The notes under the pieces were generated by a model that did no database searches, was not told where the DNA came from, and saw only the letters and a list, made by a program, of their open reading frames with translations. This document shows, one piece after another, positions 19,217-26,548 of a DNA stretch of 64,000 bases. A program made the translations under genes and the position numbers. Position 1 is the first letter of the stretch; each line of letters starts with the position of its first letter. The stretch is from Magallana gigas. Taxonomy: Eukaryota. The stretch covers positions 5,952,001-6,016,000 of the forward strand of contig NC_088859.1 of NCBI RefSeq assembly GCF_963853765.1, written 5' to 3'.

Positions 19217-22200
19217 CTAGGATGCCTTTGCCTTGGCTTCTTCTTTCTGTGCTGTCAAGTCCTCCAATTCTTCAATCATAGCAGATGCCTGCAGAACAAG
19301 GATGCTATTGTTATGGCTCAAATTTCAGTCATTGCAAAATAATCAAGTGCTTATTTTTTAAATAATTTGAAAACAATGGATTGAGAACTTTGATATATGG
19401 ATCAAGTCAATCATACAGATTAAGAGATTAATCCTTTGGAAATGTTCACGTATTTGTAAATCACTTTGATGATTTACTCCAGTATTTTAGAACTATAAAG
19501 CTTGATTTTTTTTAACCAATCAGCGACTAAACCACTTTTTTAAAAAATGTATAACAATAAAAAAGAGAAATACACAAAAACTAGTTGGATAAAAAAATAT
19601 ATAAATAAAATGTATTGTTAATTGGATAAAAAGCAGGCATGTTCTAATTAAGTTAGATTAATGTATACACATATTACACAAAATGTCCTTTATTAAATAT
19701 GATTTAACAGTAACTTTCAAAGCAAAAATCAAAAGTCTATACCTGGCATATACTAGTATTTTGGCAATGAGAAAAGTTGCATTACCAAATCTTTTCATAC
19801 TCATTATAGATTTATAACAGTTTGTAATACTTATATTTATTATAATATTATTAGTTCAAATGTTATTCTCCATTCTGAATAACTTTTTTGCATAGTATTC
19901 CAGTATTTACTTTTCTTTAAGGTGTATTGCTTAAGAATTTCATAATTCTAATGGAAGTAAATCCAAGAAGTTTTAATGTTTTTCTTTTTTGAAGAGAGAG
20001 GATGGCTGCAAAATATTCACAAATTTCATTAAGAATTTATTTCTTTGATCCAACCATCTAAACATGAAATTCAAATAAAGGCTAATGATTAATTTTTTTG
20101 TTTAATACCAATACATGTACATGAAGTTATGAAAGCACTATATGTATTATACTATACATTTAAGGTCTTGTAGACTTACTTACCCACACATAAAAAGTAG
20201 CAGCCCCAGCTGACACGTCCCTGACCTCTTCAAGGTCAAACTCCTCTAACAAGGCCTTTGCTCTTTTTGCAGGAGCTACAGGAATTTTTTCTGGCTTGCA
20301 TTCAATGCAGCGACGCTTCAAGCTTTCTTTTCCTGTTTTTCCGACCAAGGCTTGTACAGATTTCCAGATCTGATATTGAAAACATTAATTCAAATGAATA
20401 AACACCCTACTTTTAACAAATACATTTGTAACTTGCAAAAAGTAAACTGCTCATAATTATTGTGTATGTATGAACCAACTGAATACAGAACCTTCGTTTC
20501 TTTTTCCTGGTGGCCTAGCAACAAGAAAGTTGCAGTCATGACCTTATGAACCACAGCTGGAGGATTCTGGTAGCTTCTGATCTCAGCCACAGTTGCCTGC
20601 TTCAGCTCCAAGATCTCGTGGCGGATACGCTCCAGTCGTTTCAGCCGTGTCAGCAGTTTAGAAGCCTCGCCCAGTTCCTTGGCCAAAGGGACTTCAAGAC
20701 CATGCTTCTTGATTGCATTAATGGCCTTCTCGAGTTCTTCTAGTTCTCGCTTTGTCATAGCACGTTTCAGATCTACGGTACAAAAAAAGTGACTGTAGTC
20801 TTCAGAAAAAAATATATAAATATAATTGTTTAATGTAAAGTGTGCAAACTTCTGATGATTAAAACGTACCTTATCTTTTACTATTTTATGCAAATCATAA
20901 TTTTAGAATATCAAATTTTAGACAGATTTGAAAGATACCACAGCATAATCACAATTTCTAGAATTAATATAATCTATCCTCATTTCCAAGGAAATTGATT
21001 AAGATGAAATATAACAGGAGCACTTACCGTCTCTGACAAGGAGTTCCTTCAGAATTTTCTCTGCTTTGACCAGGTCCATATCTGTGTCCTCCAGCTTCTC
21101 CTTCTTGAACTCAGTAATGTTGTAGTCCAGCTGGTAGCGGTCTCGACTTTTGATGGCCACTTTCAAATTATACCTCAGCTTCCTATGTCTCTCATCTATC
21201 ATCCAATGTAAAATACAGACACTGAGCAAACACAAAATTCAAATCAAACTCAAGTCAGCAACTATGATACATTTATGTATTCATCTAAATTAATCAAATG
21301 GAGTAAAACTTTAAATTGATAGGACTTTAGTATTAATCTATCATTCCCTTCTAGTAAGATCAAGAAAATATGAAACCCAATACATGGGCTCTTCTTAAAT
21401 TTGGAATGTTTAGGAAATCTTCCATTATGGACCTTGTTTGATTATCTGTTGATATTCATACTGACCTTGTAACCTTTTGCGTAACCTCTTGGCCTCTTCT
21501 TCAGATCCCCCTTTGTTTTTCAGTTTATCCAACTCTTCCTTAGTCTTTTTCTCCTTCTCTTCTGCATCCTACAGGGTATGACAGTTAAGTTTGAAATTAT
21601 GAAGCTTAATGTACCTTTCGTTTTAATTTATGAAACTTTTTTTTTTAAACATCTACTATTCTGATTTATCAAGTTTCAACTTGACTATTGAAATCAACTT
21701 CACTAGGGAGTTAAAATATGAAATTCTCCTTAAGGGATTTTTAAAACACTTAATCAATTATGGACCCATAGTATATTCTCCTCAAAGCAATAAAAATTTT
21801 GGAGCATTTTTTTTTCCTCTGTTGATAAGTTGAACTCATCAGATTTATTTTCCCGGACCTTTGCGAGTTTCTCCACATCTTTGTACAACTCCTCTTCCTC
21901 TTTCTTTCTTCTTTCCTCTTCCTCCCTCTGTTTTTTCTCCAACTCCCTTAATCTTTCAGATTCCTTTAAATAATTTACAAAACAAATTATTATAAGGTTG
22001 TTGCAATAAACACATTGAAAGTATAAACTTCACGTGCTGTACTTTAAACAGTCTGATTAAAACCTCAGCTCTCTATCTACAGTCAGACCGCTGCATGATT
22101 TAATGAAAATTCATAATTACAGGTATACATGTAGCTTATTGCTATTTTTACAATGCTGAAACTGTTACCTCTTCTTCTTCCCTTCTTCTTCTTTCTTCCT

Positions 22201-25200
22201 CCTCTTGTTTACGCCTCTCTGAACAAAAGTAATGCAAAAACAGAGTATCAGTAAAATTGTCAAAGGGCTGCAACTCTATTATAGTAGATGCTTATTATTT
22301 TCAATTACACTTATACTGGTATATATATTACATTCTGAAAAGGAAAGCTATCTGATTATTAAATTAACATATGCAAATGAATGGCAACATTTTTTTATTA
22401 TCTTTCTATATTTATATTTCTTTCCATGGAAAATGTAAGACGAACTTAAGATTTAAAACAAACAAACCATCAAGTTTACATCTTTTTCATTCATCAATGA
22501 CAAATATATATATAAGAAAAATGGAATGCAAAGTAAATGATAAATAAATAGAATTCTGCTTAGATAGCTGAATTATATAAAAGAAAGAAATAATTATATG
22601 TTGTATTGATTCAGGTTTTTTTTTCCTGGTAAAATATCTAAATGTACAGTCCCCAAAACATTCTACTTTCCCACTTGAGCTGTTGTACGGTGAGTTAACG
22701 ATGAGCCCATTCTGAGCGAACGGTGAGTGCACTCTGAGCCAACAGTTAAATGATGAGGAAACACAGAGCACAAACATAAGCACAAAGGAATAATGAACGC
22801 ATAGTGAATGCACCAGGAACAATATGTGAATGTTATGTGAGCGCAAGATGAACGATTTATTTGGTGTGCCTCAGGAGTTGTCCTTACATTGTGTTTCGTC
22901 GGTTATAAAAAAAAAATAGTATGTATTGTTATGAGCCTAAATATAATATTATTTGATAGATCGATAAGTGAACACTGAACGAAGGTGAGTGCAAAGTAAA
23001 CGCTTTGTGAGCGCATGCTGAATGCACGGTGATCGCAAAATGGAGTAGAGTGGAGAGCACAAGTGAACGCACTGGGAGCGATGGTGAACCCACAGAATAA
23101 TTGGAAAGTAGAACATTTCAGAGACTGTACCTTTTATATGATGTATTTTCAACATTCACCCACAAATTCACTTGTGCAAATCTAGCGTCTGTAATAAATT
23201 ACTTTTACAAATACACAATATTAACGGCCATTTATATTTGGATGATAAGAAAATGGTAATTGAGGCTTGGATTTAGAAAGACATCAAGTACAGTACATTG
23301 TAAAGAGACTGTGATAATTATATATAAATTCTGTGTACATATAATTGATGCATGCATGGAATTTCTGATACTTTGACCTCTCTTCTTGTCATCAGGCATA
23401 TCGGTATATATCACAACTGTCAAAAAAACATTACACAAAATACACTGTTATTTGTAACCCTGACAAATTCTACGAAGCAAGCAAATAAAAAAAAATAAAA
23501 AATATACAAGTGCATAATAGTGAGGTCCCAGAATTTTCCAAAAAATAAAATGATTACTTGTGCTTTGGATACATTTTAATTTTATGTATTGAACCATCCC
23601 ATTTCATTCAGATATGTTGCATACAAAGTGTTGGCATGCCACACTTCATTCATATAGCATTAAAAGAAACACATCAATTAAATGCTGCATTAATTGACCT
23701 CTTTCTCGATCCTTCTCCTTATCTTCCTCCATATTGCTGATGTCTTCCTCATCAACAATGGCTGTTGTCATAGTTTATAATACAGTATTCTTTTTTAAAA
23801 TAATTAGTAAAATCAGTAGTTCATATCTGTCAATAAATTAGTATTGTCAGTTATTATTCTTTTTAAGCAGCTTTTGAATGTTAATCAAATCTATGTATTG
23901 AAATGATAAAAAGATGTTTTTTAAACATGTTTTAGACAGTGACTCACCTTCATCCTCAAGTTGTCTCTTTCTTCGCAATTCTTCATTTCTCTTTTGTTCC
24001 TTAAAAAAGAAACACATTCATTTTTTAATGAGCAACTCAATAAGGCATAATAATGAATAATACCAGAAGATAATTGCAGATGAAGTATTGTTGCTGTACA
24101 TTATTTGTGATTCATATGGATAGCTAATACATCTAATACTTTAGATAGTATAGTGCTGGAGCACCATACTAGTGATGAGAGCATTTACAATATTGGTAAA
24201 GAAGAAAGATATTTCAAAGATTATAGCATATACCTCATCTTGTCTCCTCCTCTCTTCATCTCTCTTTTTCTTTAACCTCGCCACCTCCTCCTCTGCCAAC
24301 CTTTCTCTCCTCATTAGATCTGGAATATAATATTTAATCTGGTAAATTACATCTACATATACAATTAATGGAGAGAGAAAGAATGAAACAGATAGGAAGG
24401 AGAGAGTATGAATTTTATACAATAATTCATCATCACCCATTCATACCAGCCTTTAAATGTGACAAATGAAACAAAAAAAATCACCTTCTCTCTCCTTTTC
24501 CTCTTCCATTTTCTCTGACTGAAGATCCAGTCGATTGGGAATATTGCATAACATGACTTCTATTTCAGCAAATGCCACAGGACTGCCAGGAACAGGTCGA
24601 CATTTAACAAACTCATCCCACTTCTTCTTGGAGAAATGACGGCCATGAACAGTCTGAACAAACCACCTACAACACATAATGTGTAAAAGACCAAAATTCA
24701 TTCTTCAGTCTTGAATTCTAAAGACTAAACCATCACTGAAAATTAGCTCACATTCTTATTACCTGTACTTCAAATTTTCACTAACAAAATGAAATACTGT
24801 AGAAGCAGAAATATTCATTGAGGATTTAATTTCATTATTTTCATTGGCAGTAAAAATCAACATACTTAATTCATGACAAATTTTTACCCCAAATATAAAT
24901 GAATACAAAGAGATTATGATATGACAAAATTAAATGCCAAAGAAATCTTATTTCGTTTAAAAACAACAAAATTTTGACCCAACAAAAATATGTGCTTCTA
25001 CATTATATTACCAATATCGGTCATTGACCGAATTTGTTAATAGTTAAATATAATCACTGAGCTTCATCCTGTGATATTGTATCCTTATGGTTCACATCAA
25101 TCATGGAAAACTCCCATCTGAAATCCTGAATCAGGAAGAATCGTCGGTCCATTTCCTGAAGGAGGTTATACAGTTCCGAGGGCTCGCAGTAGCTGCCATG

Positions 25201-25949
25201 TATACAAGCATATTTCATGGACTCCATAACCTACAAAATATTATTTCAAAACTATTAAATCTATTAAACATTGAATTGTTAATTTTAATTTAGTAAAAGA
25301 AAGATTCCAATGGTAAAAGAAAACTTATATTCATTTTATCTCAATTAATTGAATAAATATTTATACAGAAGTCTGAATTAAAGATCCATGCCAATATAAC
25401 TTTGTGCATTCCACAGGATGGTTCAATAACAATGTTTACATCATAAAATACATCTTTTAAATAGAAAAATTCATCAAAGTCTAATGGTGTTTTATTATAA
25501 AAAGCACAACAAGTAATCAATTACAACAAAGTTCTTTGGTTTAGCTTTCACTTATGCCAACCTGAAGATTTACACAAATCTCCACATTTGATATAATTTT
25601 AATATCCAGTAAACAATTTAAATTTCTCTAATATACAACCTGTATTTTTCTGTCATCATTGTTATTTGAAAGTTATTTTAATAATGTTTGACCTCCAATT
25701 CAGATACTGTATTTTTTACAAGCCAAATAGAAAATCTCCATCTGCATGTATGCATAAATTTTAAGCTATATATACATTCATAAAAAATTACTACACAATT
25801 TCACTTGCCTGTGGTAAACTGATACCCCCCATGCGTAGGTCTCCGTGCAGAATCTGCATCTGTATGGGAGACAAGTTCCCTTTCCCATCTGTGTCATAGT
25901 TATTGAATATGGTTTCCAGAACCACTCTCTCATCTAAGAGACCACCCAT
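19217..25949 (-). CDS. Uncharacterised protein: N-terminal EF-hand-like region, E/R/K-rich helix, C-terminal dynein stalk/microtubule-binding-domain-like module, about 566 aa
   Basis: Coding exons 25809-25949, 25058-25230, 24485-24666, 24234-24319, 23948-23999, 23699-23761, 23378-23416, 22169-22218, 21859-21963, 21466-21568, 21028-21195, 20492-20772, 20184-20369, 19217-19288 (1701 nt, phases consistent, one GC donor). EF-like loops DTDGKGNLSPIQ and DVNHKDTISQDE; motif AEIRSYQNPPAVVHKVMTATFLLLG. The start codon and the 63- and 39-nt exons are less certain. A probable non-coding first exon ends at the donor at 26648. Confidence 0.8.
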
Positions 25950-26548
25950 GTTTATATATTCACTTAAAAAAAAAATGACATCATCAACATCATTTAATTG
26001 TTGTTAAGAATACATATCAGCATAACACATTTGAAATATTTATTTCAATGCTATCTTTATACAATAAAGACATAATATACTCTCTTCTTTGAACACTTAA
26101 ACTATTCACTCAAATTCTAAGAGTACCTTTACATATCAAGTTTTCTAATATATTTGATTGGGAAAAAAAAACCAAATCTCAGTTTTAAAACATTTTTGAT
26201 TTCACATTTTGACAAAAATCAAAGATGATATTAGATTTATTTGGCATTCTTAATAAATGCTGAAATAACATTTTAGTCATCTTGTCATTTATTTATAGAT
26301 TTAGTACTTCAAACACAACCGGATATGATGGCATATCAGATATAGATGGTTGGAAATTCATTATTAAAACATGCCATTTAAGAAGCATATAAAACCGTAT
26401 ATTGATTATCATATAACAATTTGAAAACTGAAAGTTTTCAATGAAAAATAAAATGAAGGGTAAATTTTGAAATGCGTTTGGAGCATATAGCTTAACACTG
26501 CTTAATGTATAACATTTAAAACGCAACGATTTATTGTATTTCTTACAC

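What the first reader, a model, noticed from the sequence alone, without database searches (positions are those of the whole stretch)
19217..25949. Stand-alone dynein microtubule-binding-domain-like module on a charged helix with EF-hands
Seen: the C-terminus ILELKQATVAEIRSYQNPPAVVHKVMTATFLLLG..IWKSVQAL..EEFDLEEVRDVSAGAATFYVWASAM follows the dynein heavy-chain stalk tip pattern as I recall it (EIKSYxxPPxxVxxVMxAVCILLG..W..F.PE.V..VS.A...LC.WV.AM). There is no AAA ring. It is preceded by a long E/R/K-rich single-alpha-helix-like rod and two EF-hand-like loops (the first has Gln at position 12). Inference: a possibly Ca2+-regulated, motor-less microtubule tether or spacer, plausibly ciliary or sperm-flagellar.
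Basis: partly seen in the sequence, partly recalled or inferred. Interest (0 to 1): 0.75.

Follow-up and report, generated by a model that had tools for sequence, protein, structure and literature searches.

The report
Motor-less dynein microtubule-binding-domain protein, oyster
This oyster gene encodes a 553-residue protein, conserved across invertebrate animals but mislabelled "trichohyalin", whose tail is a true relative of the microtubule-gripping tip of the dynein motor yet has no motor attached; this suggests a portable microtubule anchor that I could not find described in the literature.

Summary
Window 19217-25949 (minus strand) holds a 13-exon GT-AG gene. Its 553-aa product is identical to XP_011437088.3 ("trichohyalin isoform X2", Magallana gigas). 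RNA contigs and reads confirm the introns.

The last 179 residues are homologous to the dynein stalk tip plus microtubule-binding domain (MTBD):
- A 58-sequence family profile hits only dynein heavy chains in the PDB (58 of 58, best E 2e-11).
- The AlphaFold2 model (pLDDT 96.6) matches dynein stalk and MTBD structures at Z 14-17, then drops to Z about 5 for unrelated folds.
- No AAA+ domain is in the gene or the window.

Upstream lie a calmodulin-like four-EF-hand domain and a 168-aa rod that is 72% charged and looks like a single alpha-helix; cassette exons vary its length. The two loop-like EF-hands are non-canonical across the family (Lys at position 5, Gln at position 12). Ca2+ control is therefore doubtful.

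The module is portable. It also ends hillarin/KY-like proteins, and about 17 loci in this genome carry it. No vertebrate, arthropod or nematode member was seen.

Microtubule binding, and any ciliary location, remain inferred. Verdict: a real, unannotated, motor-less MTBD family, probably a static microtubule tether. Interest is moderately high.

The parts
25809..25949 (-). Exon 1 (aa 1-47): start codon at 25949-25947; EF-hand 1 with loop residues 19-30
   Evidence: model identical to P0184. RNA joint 25230|25809.
25058..25230 (-). Exon 2: EF-hand 2 (degenerate) and EF-hand 3 with loop residues 92-103
   Evidence: Joints 25230|25809 and 24666|25058. AF2 and Foldseek indicate a calmodulin/centrin/penta-EF-like fold.
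24485..24666 (-). Exon 3: EF-hand 4 (degenerate) and the start of the charged rod (from about aa 151)
   Evidence: Joints 24666|25058 and 24319|24485.
24234..24319 (-). Exon 4: E/R/K-rich rod
23948..23999 (-). Exon 5: E/R/K-rich rod
23699..23761 (-). Exon 6: 21-aa cassette exon in the rod, present in the 553-aa isoform and skipped in the 532-aa isoform
   Evidence: Joint 22218|23948 skips it in all four runs. The 532-aa isoform P0174/P0249 lacks it.
23379..23417 (-). Alternative 13-aa cassette exon in the rod (566-aa isoform P0195)
   Evidence: tblastn of P0195. Joint 23416|23948 in run X7.
22169..22218 (-). Exon 7: rod
21859..21963 (-). Exon 8: rod
21466..21568 (-). Exon 9: end of the rod
21028..21195 (-). 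Exon 10 (aa 319-374): basic helical unit that resembles the helical lead-in of exon 11
   Evidence: pI 9.0. The likeness between the two units was judged by eye only.
20492..20772 (-). Exon 11 (aa 375-468): helical lead-in, CC1 (about aa 405-429), MTBD helices H1 and H2, including the E-I-R-S-Y-x-x-P-P signature
20184..20369 (-). Exon 12 (aa 469-530): MTBD helices H3-H6, with the invariant Trp470, a conserved basic patch (K479, K482, K486, R487), and the S-x-G-A-A..F..W motif
   Evidence: The intron position before this exon is shared by the paralogues in the genome.
19217..19288 (-). Exon 13 (aa 531-553 plus stop): return helix CC2
   Evidence: The loose end at 20183 in RNA runs reads into this exon. 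The AF2 helix runs through aa 522-552.

Best explanation
The gene encodes a non-motor protein of four parts. They are a calmodulin-like four-EF-hand head (aa 1-150), a charged single-alpha-helix-like rod (aa 151-318), a short helical region (aa 319-404), and a homologue of the dynein stalk tip (aa 405-553). The rod would span about 25 nm if fully helical, and cassette exons adjust its length. The stalk-tip homologue is a roughly 25-residue antiparallel coiled coil carrying the six-helix MTBD.

Shown here: the gene model, its expression and splicing, homology and fold identity with the dynein MTBD, absence of any AAA+ ring, and portability of the module.

Inferred: the module binds the microtubule lattice as dynein's MTBD does, through its basic face, but statically. 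With no long stalk and no ATPase, nothing can shift the coiled-coil registry. On this reading the protein is a passive tether that holds the EF-hand head a fixed distance from the microtubule. The same module would target other effector domains (hillarin/KY transglutaminase-like, CARD) to microtubules in the paralogues. The EF-hand head probably serves as a protein-docking domain rather than a Ca2+ sensor.
For: Gene and transcript:
- The 13-exon model equals XP_011437088.3.
- The junctions are seen in RNA runs from independent studies, and strand-specific reads place the RNA on the minus strand.

Homology:
- The A1 family profile against the PDB gives 58/58 dynein hits, best E 2.2e-11. It covers profile positions 4-162, including isolated yeast and mouse MTBD chains.
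- Pfam MT (PF12777) is matched by 43/58 family members at E<=0.1.
- The A1 profile also picks out loci in this genome that the dynein stalk (PF12777) and AAA_8 (PF12780) models match as well (E 5e-7).

Fold:
- AF2 pLDDT 96.6, pTM 0.89.
- VIA-align Z 17.4 (5ayh), 16.8 (3err), 14.8 (6kjo), 14.4 (6rza) and 14.2 (6rzb, microtubule-bound), then a drop to Z about 5.
- Foldseek aligns the yeast MTBD at 2.1 A over 116 columns.

Signature and charge:
- Invariant or nearly invariant E438, Y442, P445, G461, W470, S521, G523, A524, F527 and W530 align with residues of the dynein heavy chains aligned here.
- The MTBD core has net charge +4 and pI 9.2. Basic positions R440, K479, K482, K486 and R487 are conserved.

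Portability:
- The same roughly 170-aa unit ends KY/hillarin-like, CARD-containing and multi-copy proteins.
- About 17 loci carry it in this genome, with a shared intron position.

Precedent: a non-dynein microtubule-associated protein modelled in a cryo-EM structure of a Toxoplasma intraconoidal microtubule (8-nm repeat) has the same fold (9ya2_L, Z 10.3, rmsd 3.0 A over 124 residues; PMC12819142).

Rod: 72% charged, 0.38 opposite-charge i/i+4 pairs per residue. The linker is 142-347 aa long in orthologues.
Against: - No binding experiment or complex prediction was possible.
- The window's own protein scores below Pfam's cut-off for PF12777 (20.2 against 24 bits). The six-frame PF12777 scan of the genome did not list the locus.
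- By my hand alignment of the H6 region with the mouse dynein-1 sequence, which I recalled from memory, dynein's H6 arginine (Arg3382) falls on an Asp, with an Arg one residue earlier. The contact set may therefore differ. In one search the residue just before the conserved Val-Ser is Lys in the two dyneins aligned there and Asp in the family.
- Two other non-dynein proteins with this fold sit in radial spokes without touching the lattice: RSP2 (7jtk_C) and probably EFCAB5 (9fqr_Xl). The fold alone therefore does not prove microtubule binding.
- The family was not found in vertebrates, which have motile cilia.
Confidence: 0.6

Rival explanations
1. The MTBD-like module is a protein-protein docking domain inside an axonemal or other cytoskeletal complex, as the same fold appears to be in radial-spoke proteins RSP2 and EFCAB5. 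On this reading it does not bind the microtubule lattice. The protein would be a structural strut of such a complex.
For: Non-dynein chains 7jtk_C (Chlamydomonas radial spoke 1, Z 12.7) and 9fqr_Xl (bovine sperm 96-nm repeat, Z 11.0) share the fold. AFDB Swiss-Prot hits are RSP2 430-594 and EFCAB5 1314-1477. EFCAB5 is described as a stalk protein of radial spoke 3 that bridges to RS2 (PMC11779644). The family-specific basic patch G-K-T-G-K-E-S-L-K-R-R includes three residues that dynein lacks in the alignment.
Against: Sequence similarity is to dynein MTBDs themselves (E 2e-11, about 20-24% identity). RSP2 and EFCAB5 are detectable only by structure, at 10-15% identity. The H1 signature that contacts tubulin in dynein is the most conserved part of the module. 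The module is fused to many unrelated N-terminal domains, which suits a generic target such as microtubules better than one specific partner.
Confidence: 0.22
2. The protein is a Ca2+-switched microtubule tether. Ca2+ binding to the EF-hands would change microtubule affinity or partner binding.
For: The N-terminal domain has a calmodulin/centrin/penta-EF-like fold. Pfam EF-hand_6 passes its cut-off on the isolated domain (27.6 against 25 bits). In the oyster protein, EF3 keeps Asp1, Asn3 and Glu12.
Against: Position 5 is Lys in both oyster loops and is most often Lys across 43 orthologues. Position 12 is Gln in 31/43 (EF1) and 27/43 (EF3). Position 3 of EF1 is not conserved. EF2 and EF4 lack ligand patterns. 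Purifying selection is evidently not on the Ca2+ ligands.
Confidence: 0.12
3. The likeness is an artefact. It would be either a decayed fragment of a dynein heavy-chain gene, or a chance resemblance of coiled-coil and low-complexity sequence.
For: The full-length Pfam scan does not report PF12777. Public databases name the protein only by its composition. Exon 12 alone finds no dynein in the PDB.
Against: The reading frame is intact, with canonical splice sites and abundant spliced RNA. The same architecture is conserved from ctenophores and sponges to amphioxus and tunicates. The profile E-value is 2e-11 with only dynein hits. The globular six-helix fold is matched at Z 14-17, not merely a coiled coil.
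Confidence: 0.02

Closest known systems
Dynein heavy chain stalk tip / microtubule-binding domain (Pfam PF12777 'MT'; PDB 3ERR, 5AYH, 6RZB, 6RZA, 6KJO)
   Same: A six-helix globular domain at the tip of an antiparallel coiled coil. The signature residues are shared: E-I-[RK]-S-[YF]-x-x-P-P in H1, Leu-x-Gly ending H2, Trp opening H3, and S-x-x-A..W in H6. The charge is basic. Profile E is 2e-11 and Z is 14-17.
   Different: There is no AAA+ ring and no linker. The coiled coil is only about 25-30 residues per strand, whereas the dynein stalk is far longer (its Pfam model has 344 positions), so ATP-driven registry sliding is impossible. There is a three-residue insertion and a conserved basic patch after H3. 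The module stands at the C-terminus of a 553-aa protein. The window's protein scores below Pfam's gathering cut-off (20.2 against 24 bits).
Hillarin / KY-like (transglutaminase-core plus Ig-like_KY) proteins of invertebrates carrying the same C-terminal module (for example P0045, P0008, P0082, P0248 'hillarin-like')
   Same: They carry the same roughly 170-aa module at 40-50% identity. The about 17 paralogous loci in the oyster genome share the intron position within the module; their N-terminal domains were not examined.
   Different: The N-terminal parts are entirely different: a transglutaminase-like core and KY Ig-like repeats, sometimes a CARD, instead of the EF-hand head and charged rod.
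Non-dynein proteins with an MTBD-like fold: Chlamydomonas RSP2 (7jtk_C), mammalian EFCAB5 (probably 9fqr_Xl), T. brucei FAZ1, and a Toxoplasma intraconoidal-microtubule MAP (9ya2_L)
   Same: The same helical fold at Z 10-13 or TM 0.56-0.66. All are flagellar or microtubule-associated.
   Different: Only 10-15% identity, and none was found by sequence search. Their architectures differ (DPY30, GAF and others). They are not orthologues of this family. The two papers I searched (PMC11779644, PMC12819142) do not describe these domains as dynein-like in the passages retrieved.
ER/K single-alpha-helix (SAH) spacers, as in myosin X, myosin VI and caldesmon (from established knowledge)
   Same: 72% charged residues, dense i/i+4 Glu-Lys/Arg pairs, few hydrophobic residues, and variable length.
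   Different: No experimental evidence here for a monomeric helix. The length is tuned by cassette exons.
Calmodulin / centrin / penta-EF-hand proteins
   Same: A four-EF-hand fold. Foldseek E is about 1e-4 to centrin, calmodulin, sorcin and ALG-2.
   Different: The Ca2+ ligand positions are not conserved: Lys at position 5 and Gln at position 12. The domain is covalently attached to a rod and an MTBD.

Membership tests
Dynein stalk/MTBD (Pfam PF12777 MT) | Score at or above Pfam's gathering cut-off (24 bits) | tested here: not met
   P0184:375-553 scores 20.2 bits, E 3.5e-4, on profile positions 100-207. The full-length scan reports nothing. Some family members pass (P0032, 26 bits), and 43/58 match at E<=0.1.
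Dynein stalk/MTBD (Pfam PF12777 MT) | Significant profile-level sequence homology to solved dynein MTBDs | tested here: met
   The A1 profile against the PDB gives 58/58 dynein hits, best E 2.2e-11. Isolated MTBD chains 6kjo and 6kio score 1e-10.
Dynein stalk/MTBD (Pfam PF12777 MT) | Six-helix MTBD fold on an antiparallel coiled coil | tested here: met
   AF2 pLDDT 96.6. Z 17.4 to 12.2 against ten dynein stalk or MTBD entries, with unrelated folds at Z about 5 or below.
Dynein stalk/MTBD (Pfam PF12777 MT) | Conserved core signature in H1, H2, H3 and H6 | tested here: met
   Alignments. Invariant and near-invariant columns.
Dynein heavy chain (the motor) | MTBD inserted between AAA4 and AAA5 of a six-AAA+ ring, on a long stalk | tested here: not met
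   The protein is complete at 553 aa. No PF12780 hit lies in the window; the nearest is 0.5 Mb away. Pfam finds no AAA domain.
Dynein stalk/MTBD (function) | Binds the alpha/beta-tubulin intradimer groove | not testable with these tools
   The tubulin genes found in this genome that I inspected are split by introns, and the complex tool needs unaltered sequences.
EF-hand Ca2+-binding proteins | EF-hand fold (paired helix-loop-helix) | tested here: met
   AF2 pLDDT 93.9. Foldseek hits centrin, calmodulin and penta-EF proteins at E about 1e-4. EF-hand_6 scores 27.6 bits on aa 1-165.
EF-hand Ca2+-binding proteins | Canonical 12-residue loop with oxygen ligands at positions 1, 3, 5 and Glu/Asp at 12 | tested here: not met
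   Oyster EF1 has Lys at position 5 and Gln at 12. EF3 has Lys at 5. Across 43 orthologues, Gln at position 12 occurs in 31 (EF1) and 27 (EF3), and Lys is the commonest residue at position 5.
ER/K single alpha-helix | High charge density with i/i+4 opposite-charge pairs and low hydrophobicity | tested here: met
   aa 151-318: 72% charged, 14% hydrophobic, 0.38 pairs per residue.
ER/K single alpha-helix | Stable monomeric helix in solution | not testable with these tools
   This needs circular dichroism, SAXS or analytical ultracentrifugation.
Trichohyalin / caldesmon / golgin (the database names) | The families' own domains (S100 head of trichohyalin, caldesmon domain, and so on) | tested here: not met
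   Pfam scans of P0184, P0007, P0010 and P0025 report none. The names follow composition only.

The most novel reading that the evidence does not exclude
The dynein microtubule-binding domain also exists as an autonomous, portable domain in non-motor proteins across Metazoa. It is found from ctenophores and sponges to amphioxus and tunicates, appears lost in vertebrates and ecdysozoans, and is expanded to about 17 genes in oyster. On this reading the EF-hand/rod/MTBD protein is its conserved single-copy prototype. It would be a natural, registry-locked MTBD that tethers cargo domains to microtubules without ATP. It would bear on how dynein acquired, or donated, its track-binding tip.
Probability: 0.45. 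Interest if true: 0.75.

Novelty: new variant of a known kind. Interest (0 to 1): 0.66.

Why it matters
Dynein's MTBD is generally treated as a part peculiar to the motor, its affinity set allosterically by the AAA+ ring through the stalk. Consequences if this is a widespread motor-less version:

- It offers a natural minimal MTBD with a fixed coiled-coil registry for studying affinity and lattice recognition.
- It adds a class of microtubule-associated proteins in most invertebrate phyla, including fusions to hillarin/KY transglutaminase-like and CARD domains.
- It opens the question of whether the module was exapted from a dynein gene or is an older, independent domain.
- It corrects dozens of misleading "trichohyalin-like", "caldesmon-like" and "golgin-like" annotations.

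Tried and rejected
- **PF12777 six-frame scan of the genome.** The locus was not listed, because the exon-wise signal is too weak. This was superseded by profile and fold evidence.
- **Exon 12 alone against the PDB.** Only chance hits to ribosomal protein S18.
- **Single-exon Pfam scans.** Sub-threshold only.
The library is limited, so this is not proof of absence.
- **Earlier scan notes.** Nothing found.
- **Orthology with EFCAB5.** Rejected: the architecture differs and the likeness is only at fold level.
- **Decayed dynein fragment.** Rejected.
- **N-myristoylation of the Met-Gly start.** Considered and rejected. Most orthologues read M-G-E-L, and the oyster has Asp at position 6. Both violate the PROSITE PS00008 pattern as I recall it.
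- **Complex prediction with tubulin.** Not run. The alpha- and beta-tubulin loci I inspected (from the hits) lack an uninterrupted full-length reading frame, and joined exons are not 'unaltered' sequences.
- **Affinity state.** The model fits the low-affinity yeast MTBD (6kjo) better than the high-affinity one (6kjn): rmsd 2.8 A against 6.3 A (VIA-align) and 2.1 A against 3.2 A (Foldseek). I do not lean on this, because a predicted model may simply echo training structures.
Full report
**1. What is in the sequence**

The window is AT-rich animal DNA with no N runs. Each is flanked by AG and GT.

Guided by a database homologue, I assembled 13 exons with canonical splice sites. They give 1,662 nt and 553 aa, with no mismatch to P0184. 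P0184 is XP_011437088.3, "trichohyalin isoform X2 [Magallana gigas]". The window is therefore Pacific oyster, at G000:C7:5952001-6016000.

**2. It is one expressed gene**

RNA runs hold 0.23-0.34 of the sampled words of the 6.7-kb stretch, which is about the exonic share. I laid three RNA runs and one probable RNA run, all from different studies, on 20000-25980. Joints with CT..AC ends appear at 11 exon junctions, which equals GT..AG on the minus strand. The exon 12 to exon 13 junction lies outside the laid stretch; the loose ends at 20183 read into exon 13.

- In the stranded poly-A run, the first mates lie on the plus strand, as expected for a minus-strand RNA.
- All four runs carry a joint that skips the 63-nt exon 6 (joint 22218|23948), which gives the 532-aa isoform.
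- A second 39-nt cassette (23417-23379) is joined in one run.
- The 532-aa protein is found on well over 200 assembled transcript contigs of about 2.1-2.2 kb.

**3. The C-terminus is a homologue of the dynein stalk tip and MTBD**

- Exon 11 alone (93 aa) against the PDB returns 22 dynein heavy chains among 23 hits at E<=10. They align at the end of CC1 and at H1/H2 (best E 0.0027, DNAH2).
- An exhaustive search with that exon found 517 representatives at E<=1e-3.
- The whole roughly 170-aa unit is conserved as a block in more than 120 fetched proteins.
- A 58-sequence alignment (A1), searched as a profile against the PDB, gives 58 hits, all dynein. The best E is 2.2e-11. It covers profile positions 4-162 and includes the isolated yeast and mouse MTBD chains.
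- Pfam's MT model is hit by 43/58 members. The oyster protein reaches only 20.2 bits against a cut-off of 24.
- In a full-length scan the hit disappears, and a six-frame scan of the genome missed the locus. This explains why public records name the protein only by its composition.

AlphaFold2 on A1 gives pLDDT 96.6 and pTM 0.89. The model has a helical lead-in, a 25-residue CC1, six short helices and a 31-residue return helix.

- Foldseek's top hits are dynein stalks and MTBDs. The yeast MTBD aligns at 2.1 A over 116 columns.
- VIA-align gives Z 17.4 (5ayh), 16.8 (3err), 14.8 (6kjo), 14.4 (6rza) and 14.2 (6rzb). There are thirteen chains at Z>=8, followed by a drop to about 5.
- A dynein heavy-chain gene 0.5 Mb away on the same chromosome aligns by eye, helix for helix, with the oyster module.

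The family's invariant and near-invariant positions are E438, Y442, P445, M453, L460, G461, W470, G481, S521, G523, A524, F527 and W530; most of them align with the same or similar residues in the dyneins compared here.

**4. No motor**

The protein ends at 553 aa and Pfam finds no AAA domain in it. The AAA_8 model, which marks AAA4 just before the dynein stalk, has 82 matches in the genome but none in the window.

**5. The rest of the protein**

*EF-hand head.* Residues 1-165 fold with pLDDT 93.9 into eight helices. They match centrin, calmodulin and penta-EF-hand proteins at Foldseek E about 1e-4. The family profile hits EF-hand proteins weakly.

The loops are non-canonical in a conserved way. 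In 43 orthologues, position 5 is most often Lys. Position 12 is Gln in 31 (EF1) and 27 (EF3). Position 3 of EF1 varies freely. Glu-to-Gln at position 12 is the textbook way to kill a calmodulin site, so I rate Ca2+ sensing as unlikely.

*Rod.* Residues 151-318 are 72% D/E/K/R and 14% hydrophobic, with dense i/i+4 opposite charges. That is the composition of an ER/K single alpha-helix. The spacer between head and module is 142-347 aa long in orthologues. In oyster its length is altered by the two cassette exons.

*Helical region.* Residues 319-374 form a basic helical unit that looks, by eye, like a repeat of the lead-in to CC1. I did not test this.

**6. Distribution**

The full architecture is found in the following groups:
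- molluscs, a brachiopod, annelids, nemerteans and a bryozoan;
- hemichordates, echinoderms, amphioxus and tunicates;
- an orthonectid, cnidarians, a sponge and ctenophores.

Names are always compositional or "uncharacterized". No vertebrate, arthropod or nematode protein appeared in either list. This is suggestive, not proof.

The module alone also ends other proteins:
- KY/hillarin-like proteins with a transglutaminase core and KY Ig-like repeats;
- one protein with a CARD domain;
- one with laminin-EGF repeats;
- proteins with several copies of the module.

The oyster genome has about 17 loci with the module, including two tandem clusters of five. All share an intron at module position about 93-95.

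**7. How it most likely works**

*Shown:* a motor-less protein with a dynein-type MTBD on a stubby coiled coil, joined by a long charged rod to an EF-hand-fold head.

*Inferred:* the module binds microtubules. Four observations fit this.
- The core is basic (net +4, pI 9.2).
- The basic residue of the H1 signature is 90% conserved as Arg/Lys.
- There is a family-specific conserved basic patch (K479, K482, K486, R487).
- The domain is fused to many unrelated partners, as expected of a generic targeting domain.

With no long stalk and no ATPase, the affinity cannot be cycled, so it should act as a static tether. If helical, the rod would hold the head about 25 nm from the lattice (168 residues at 0.15 nm each, my arithmetic).

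*Caveats:*
- By my hand alignment with the mouse dynein-1 H6 sequence as I recall it, dynein's H6 Arg (mouse Arg3382) falls on an Asp here.
- The same fold occurs in radial-spoke proteins that do not touch the lattice: 7jtk_C, and 9fqr_Xl, which is probably EFCAB5.
- On the other side, a Toxoplasma intraconoidal-microtubule MAP has the fold while sitting on a microtubule with 8-nm periodicity (9ya2_L, Z 10.3).

I put microtubule binding at about 0.6, a non-lattice docking role at about 0.2, and Ca2+ switching at about 0.1.

**8. Comparison, novelty and score**

The module is a relative of the dynein MTBD by profile sequence homology, signature residues and fold. The protein is not a dynein, because the defining AAA+ ring is absent, and the oyster protein itself falls below Pfam's cut-off. 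Ten literature searches that ran found nothing describing this family or a stand-alone dynein MTBD. Some automatic annotations do label short proteins "dynein heavy chain coiled coil stalk domain-containing". I therefore class it as a new variant of a known kind.

I score interest at 0.66. The structural and evolutionary point would surprise dynein specialists and is directly testable. The function itself remains inferred.

Noticed in passing
window 24792-25002 (inside intron 2 of the gene): RNA depth is very high, up to about 1,900 in run X3, on both strands. Many loose ends lie at 24792-24795, 24841 and 25001. It looks like a copy of a dispersed repeat or transposable element that is expressed elsewhere.
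   Followed up: no
window 22508-23977 (the long intron region between exons 7 and 5): Low-depth contigs (about 19x) in runs X1 and X7 cover the intron continuously, with many substitutions and small indels relative to the window. This could be unspliced RNA or DNA carry-over from a different haplotype.
   Followed up: no
G000:C8:46.78-47.36 Mb (outside the window): At least ten tandem copies, 20-60 kb apart, each carry both AAA_8 (PF12780) and MT (PF12777) exons. This is a tandemly amplified array of dynein-heavy-chain-like genes or gene segments.
   Followed up: partly
G000:C6:5.798-5.830 Mb and G000:C7:51.51-51.55 Mb (outside the window): Two tandem clusters of five loci each carry the same MTBD-like module, with the same intron position as the window's gene. 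Singles lie on C3, C6 and C7.
   Followed up: partly
PDB chains 9ya2_L, 7jtk_C and 9fqr_Xl: Three non-dynein chains share the MTBD fold at Z 10-13. They come from a Toxoplasma intraconoidal-microtubule MAP, Chlamydomonas radial spoke 1, and the bovine sperm 96-nm repeat. The two papers read do not mention a dynein likeness in the passages retrieved.
   Followed up: partly
G000:C7:6493970-6496761 (0.5 Mb from the window): A conventional dynein heavy-chain gene (AAA_8 180 bits, MT 336 bits) lies on the same chromosome arm as the motor-less gene. Nothing suggests the proximity means anything.
   Followed up: no
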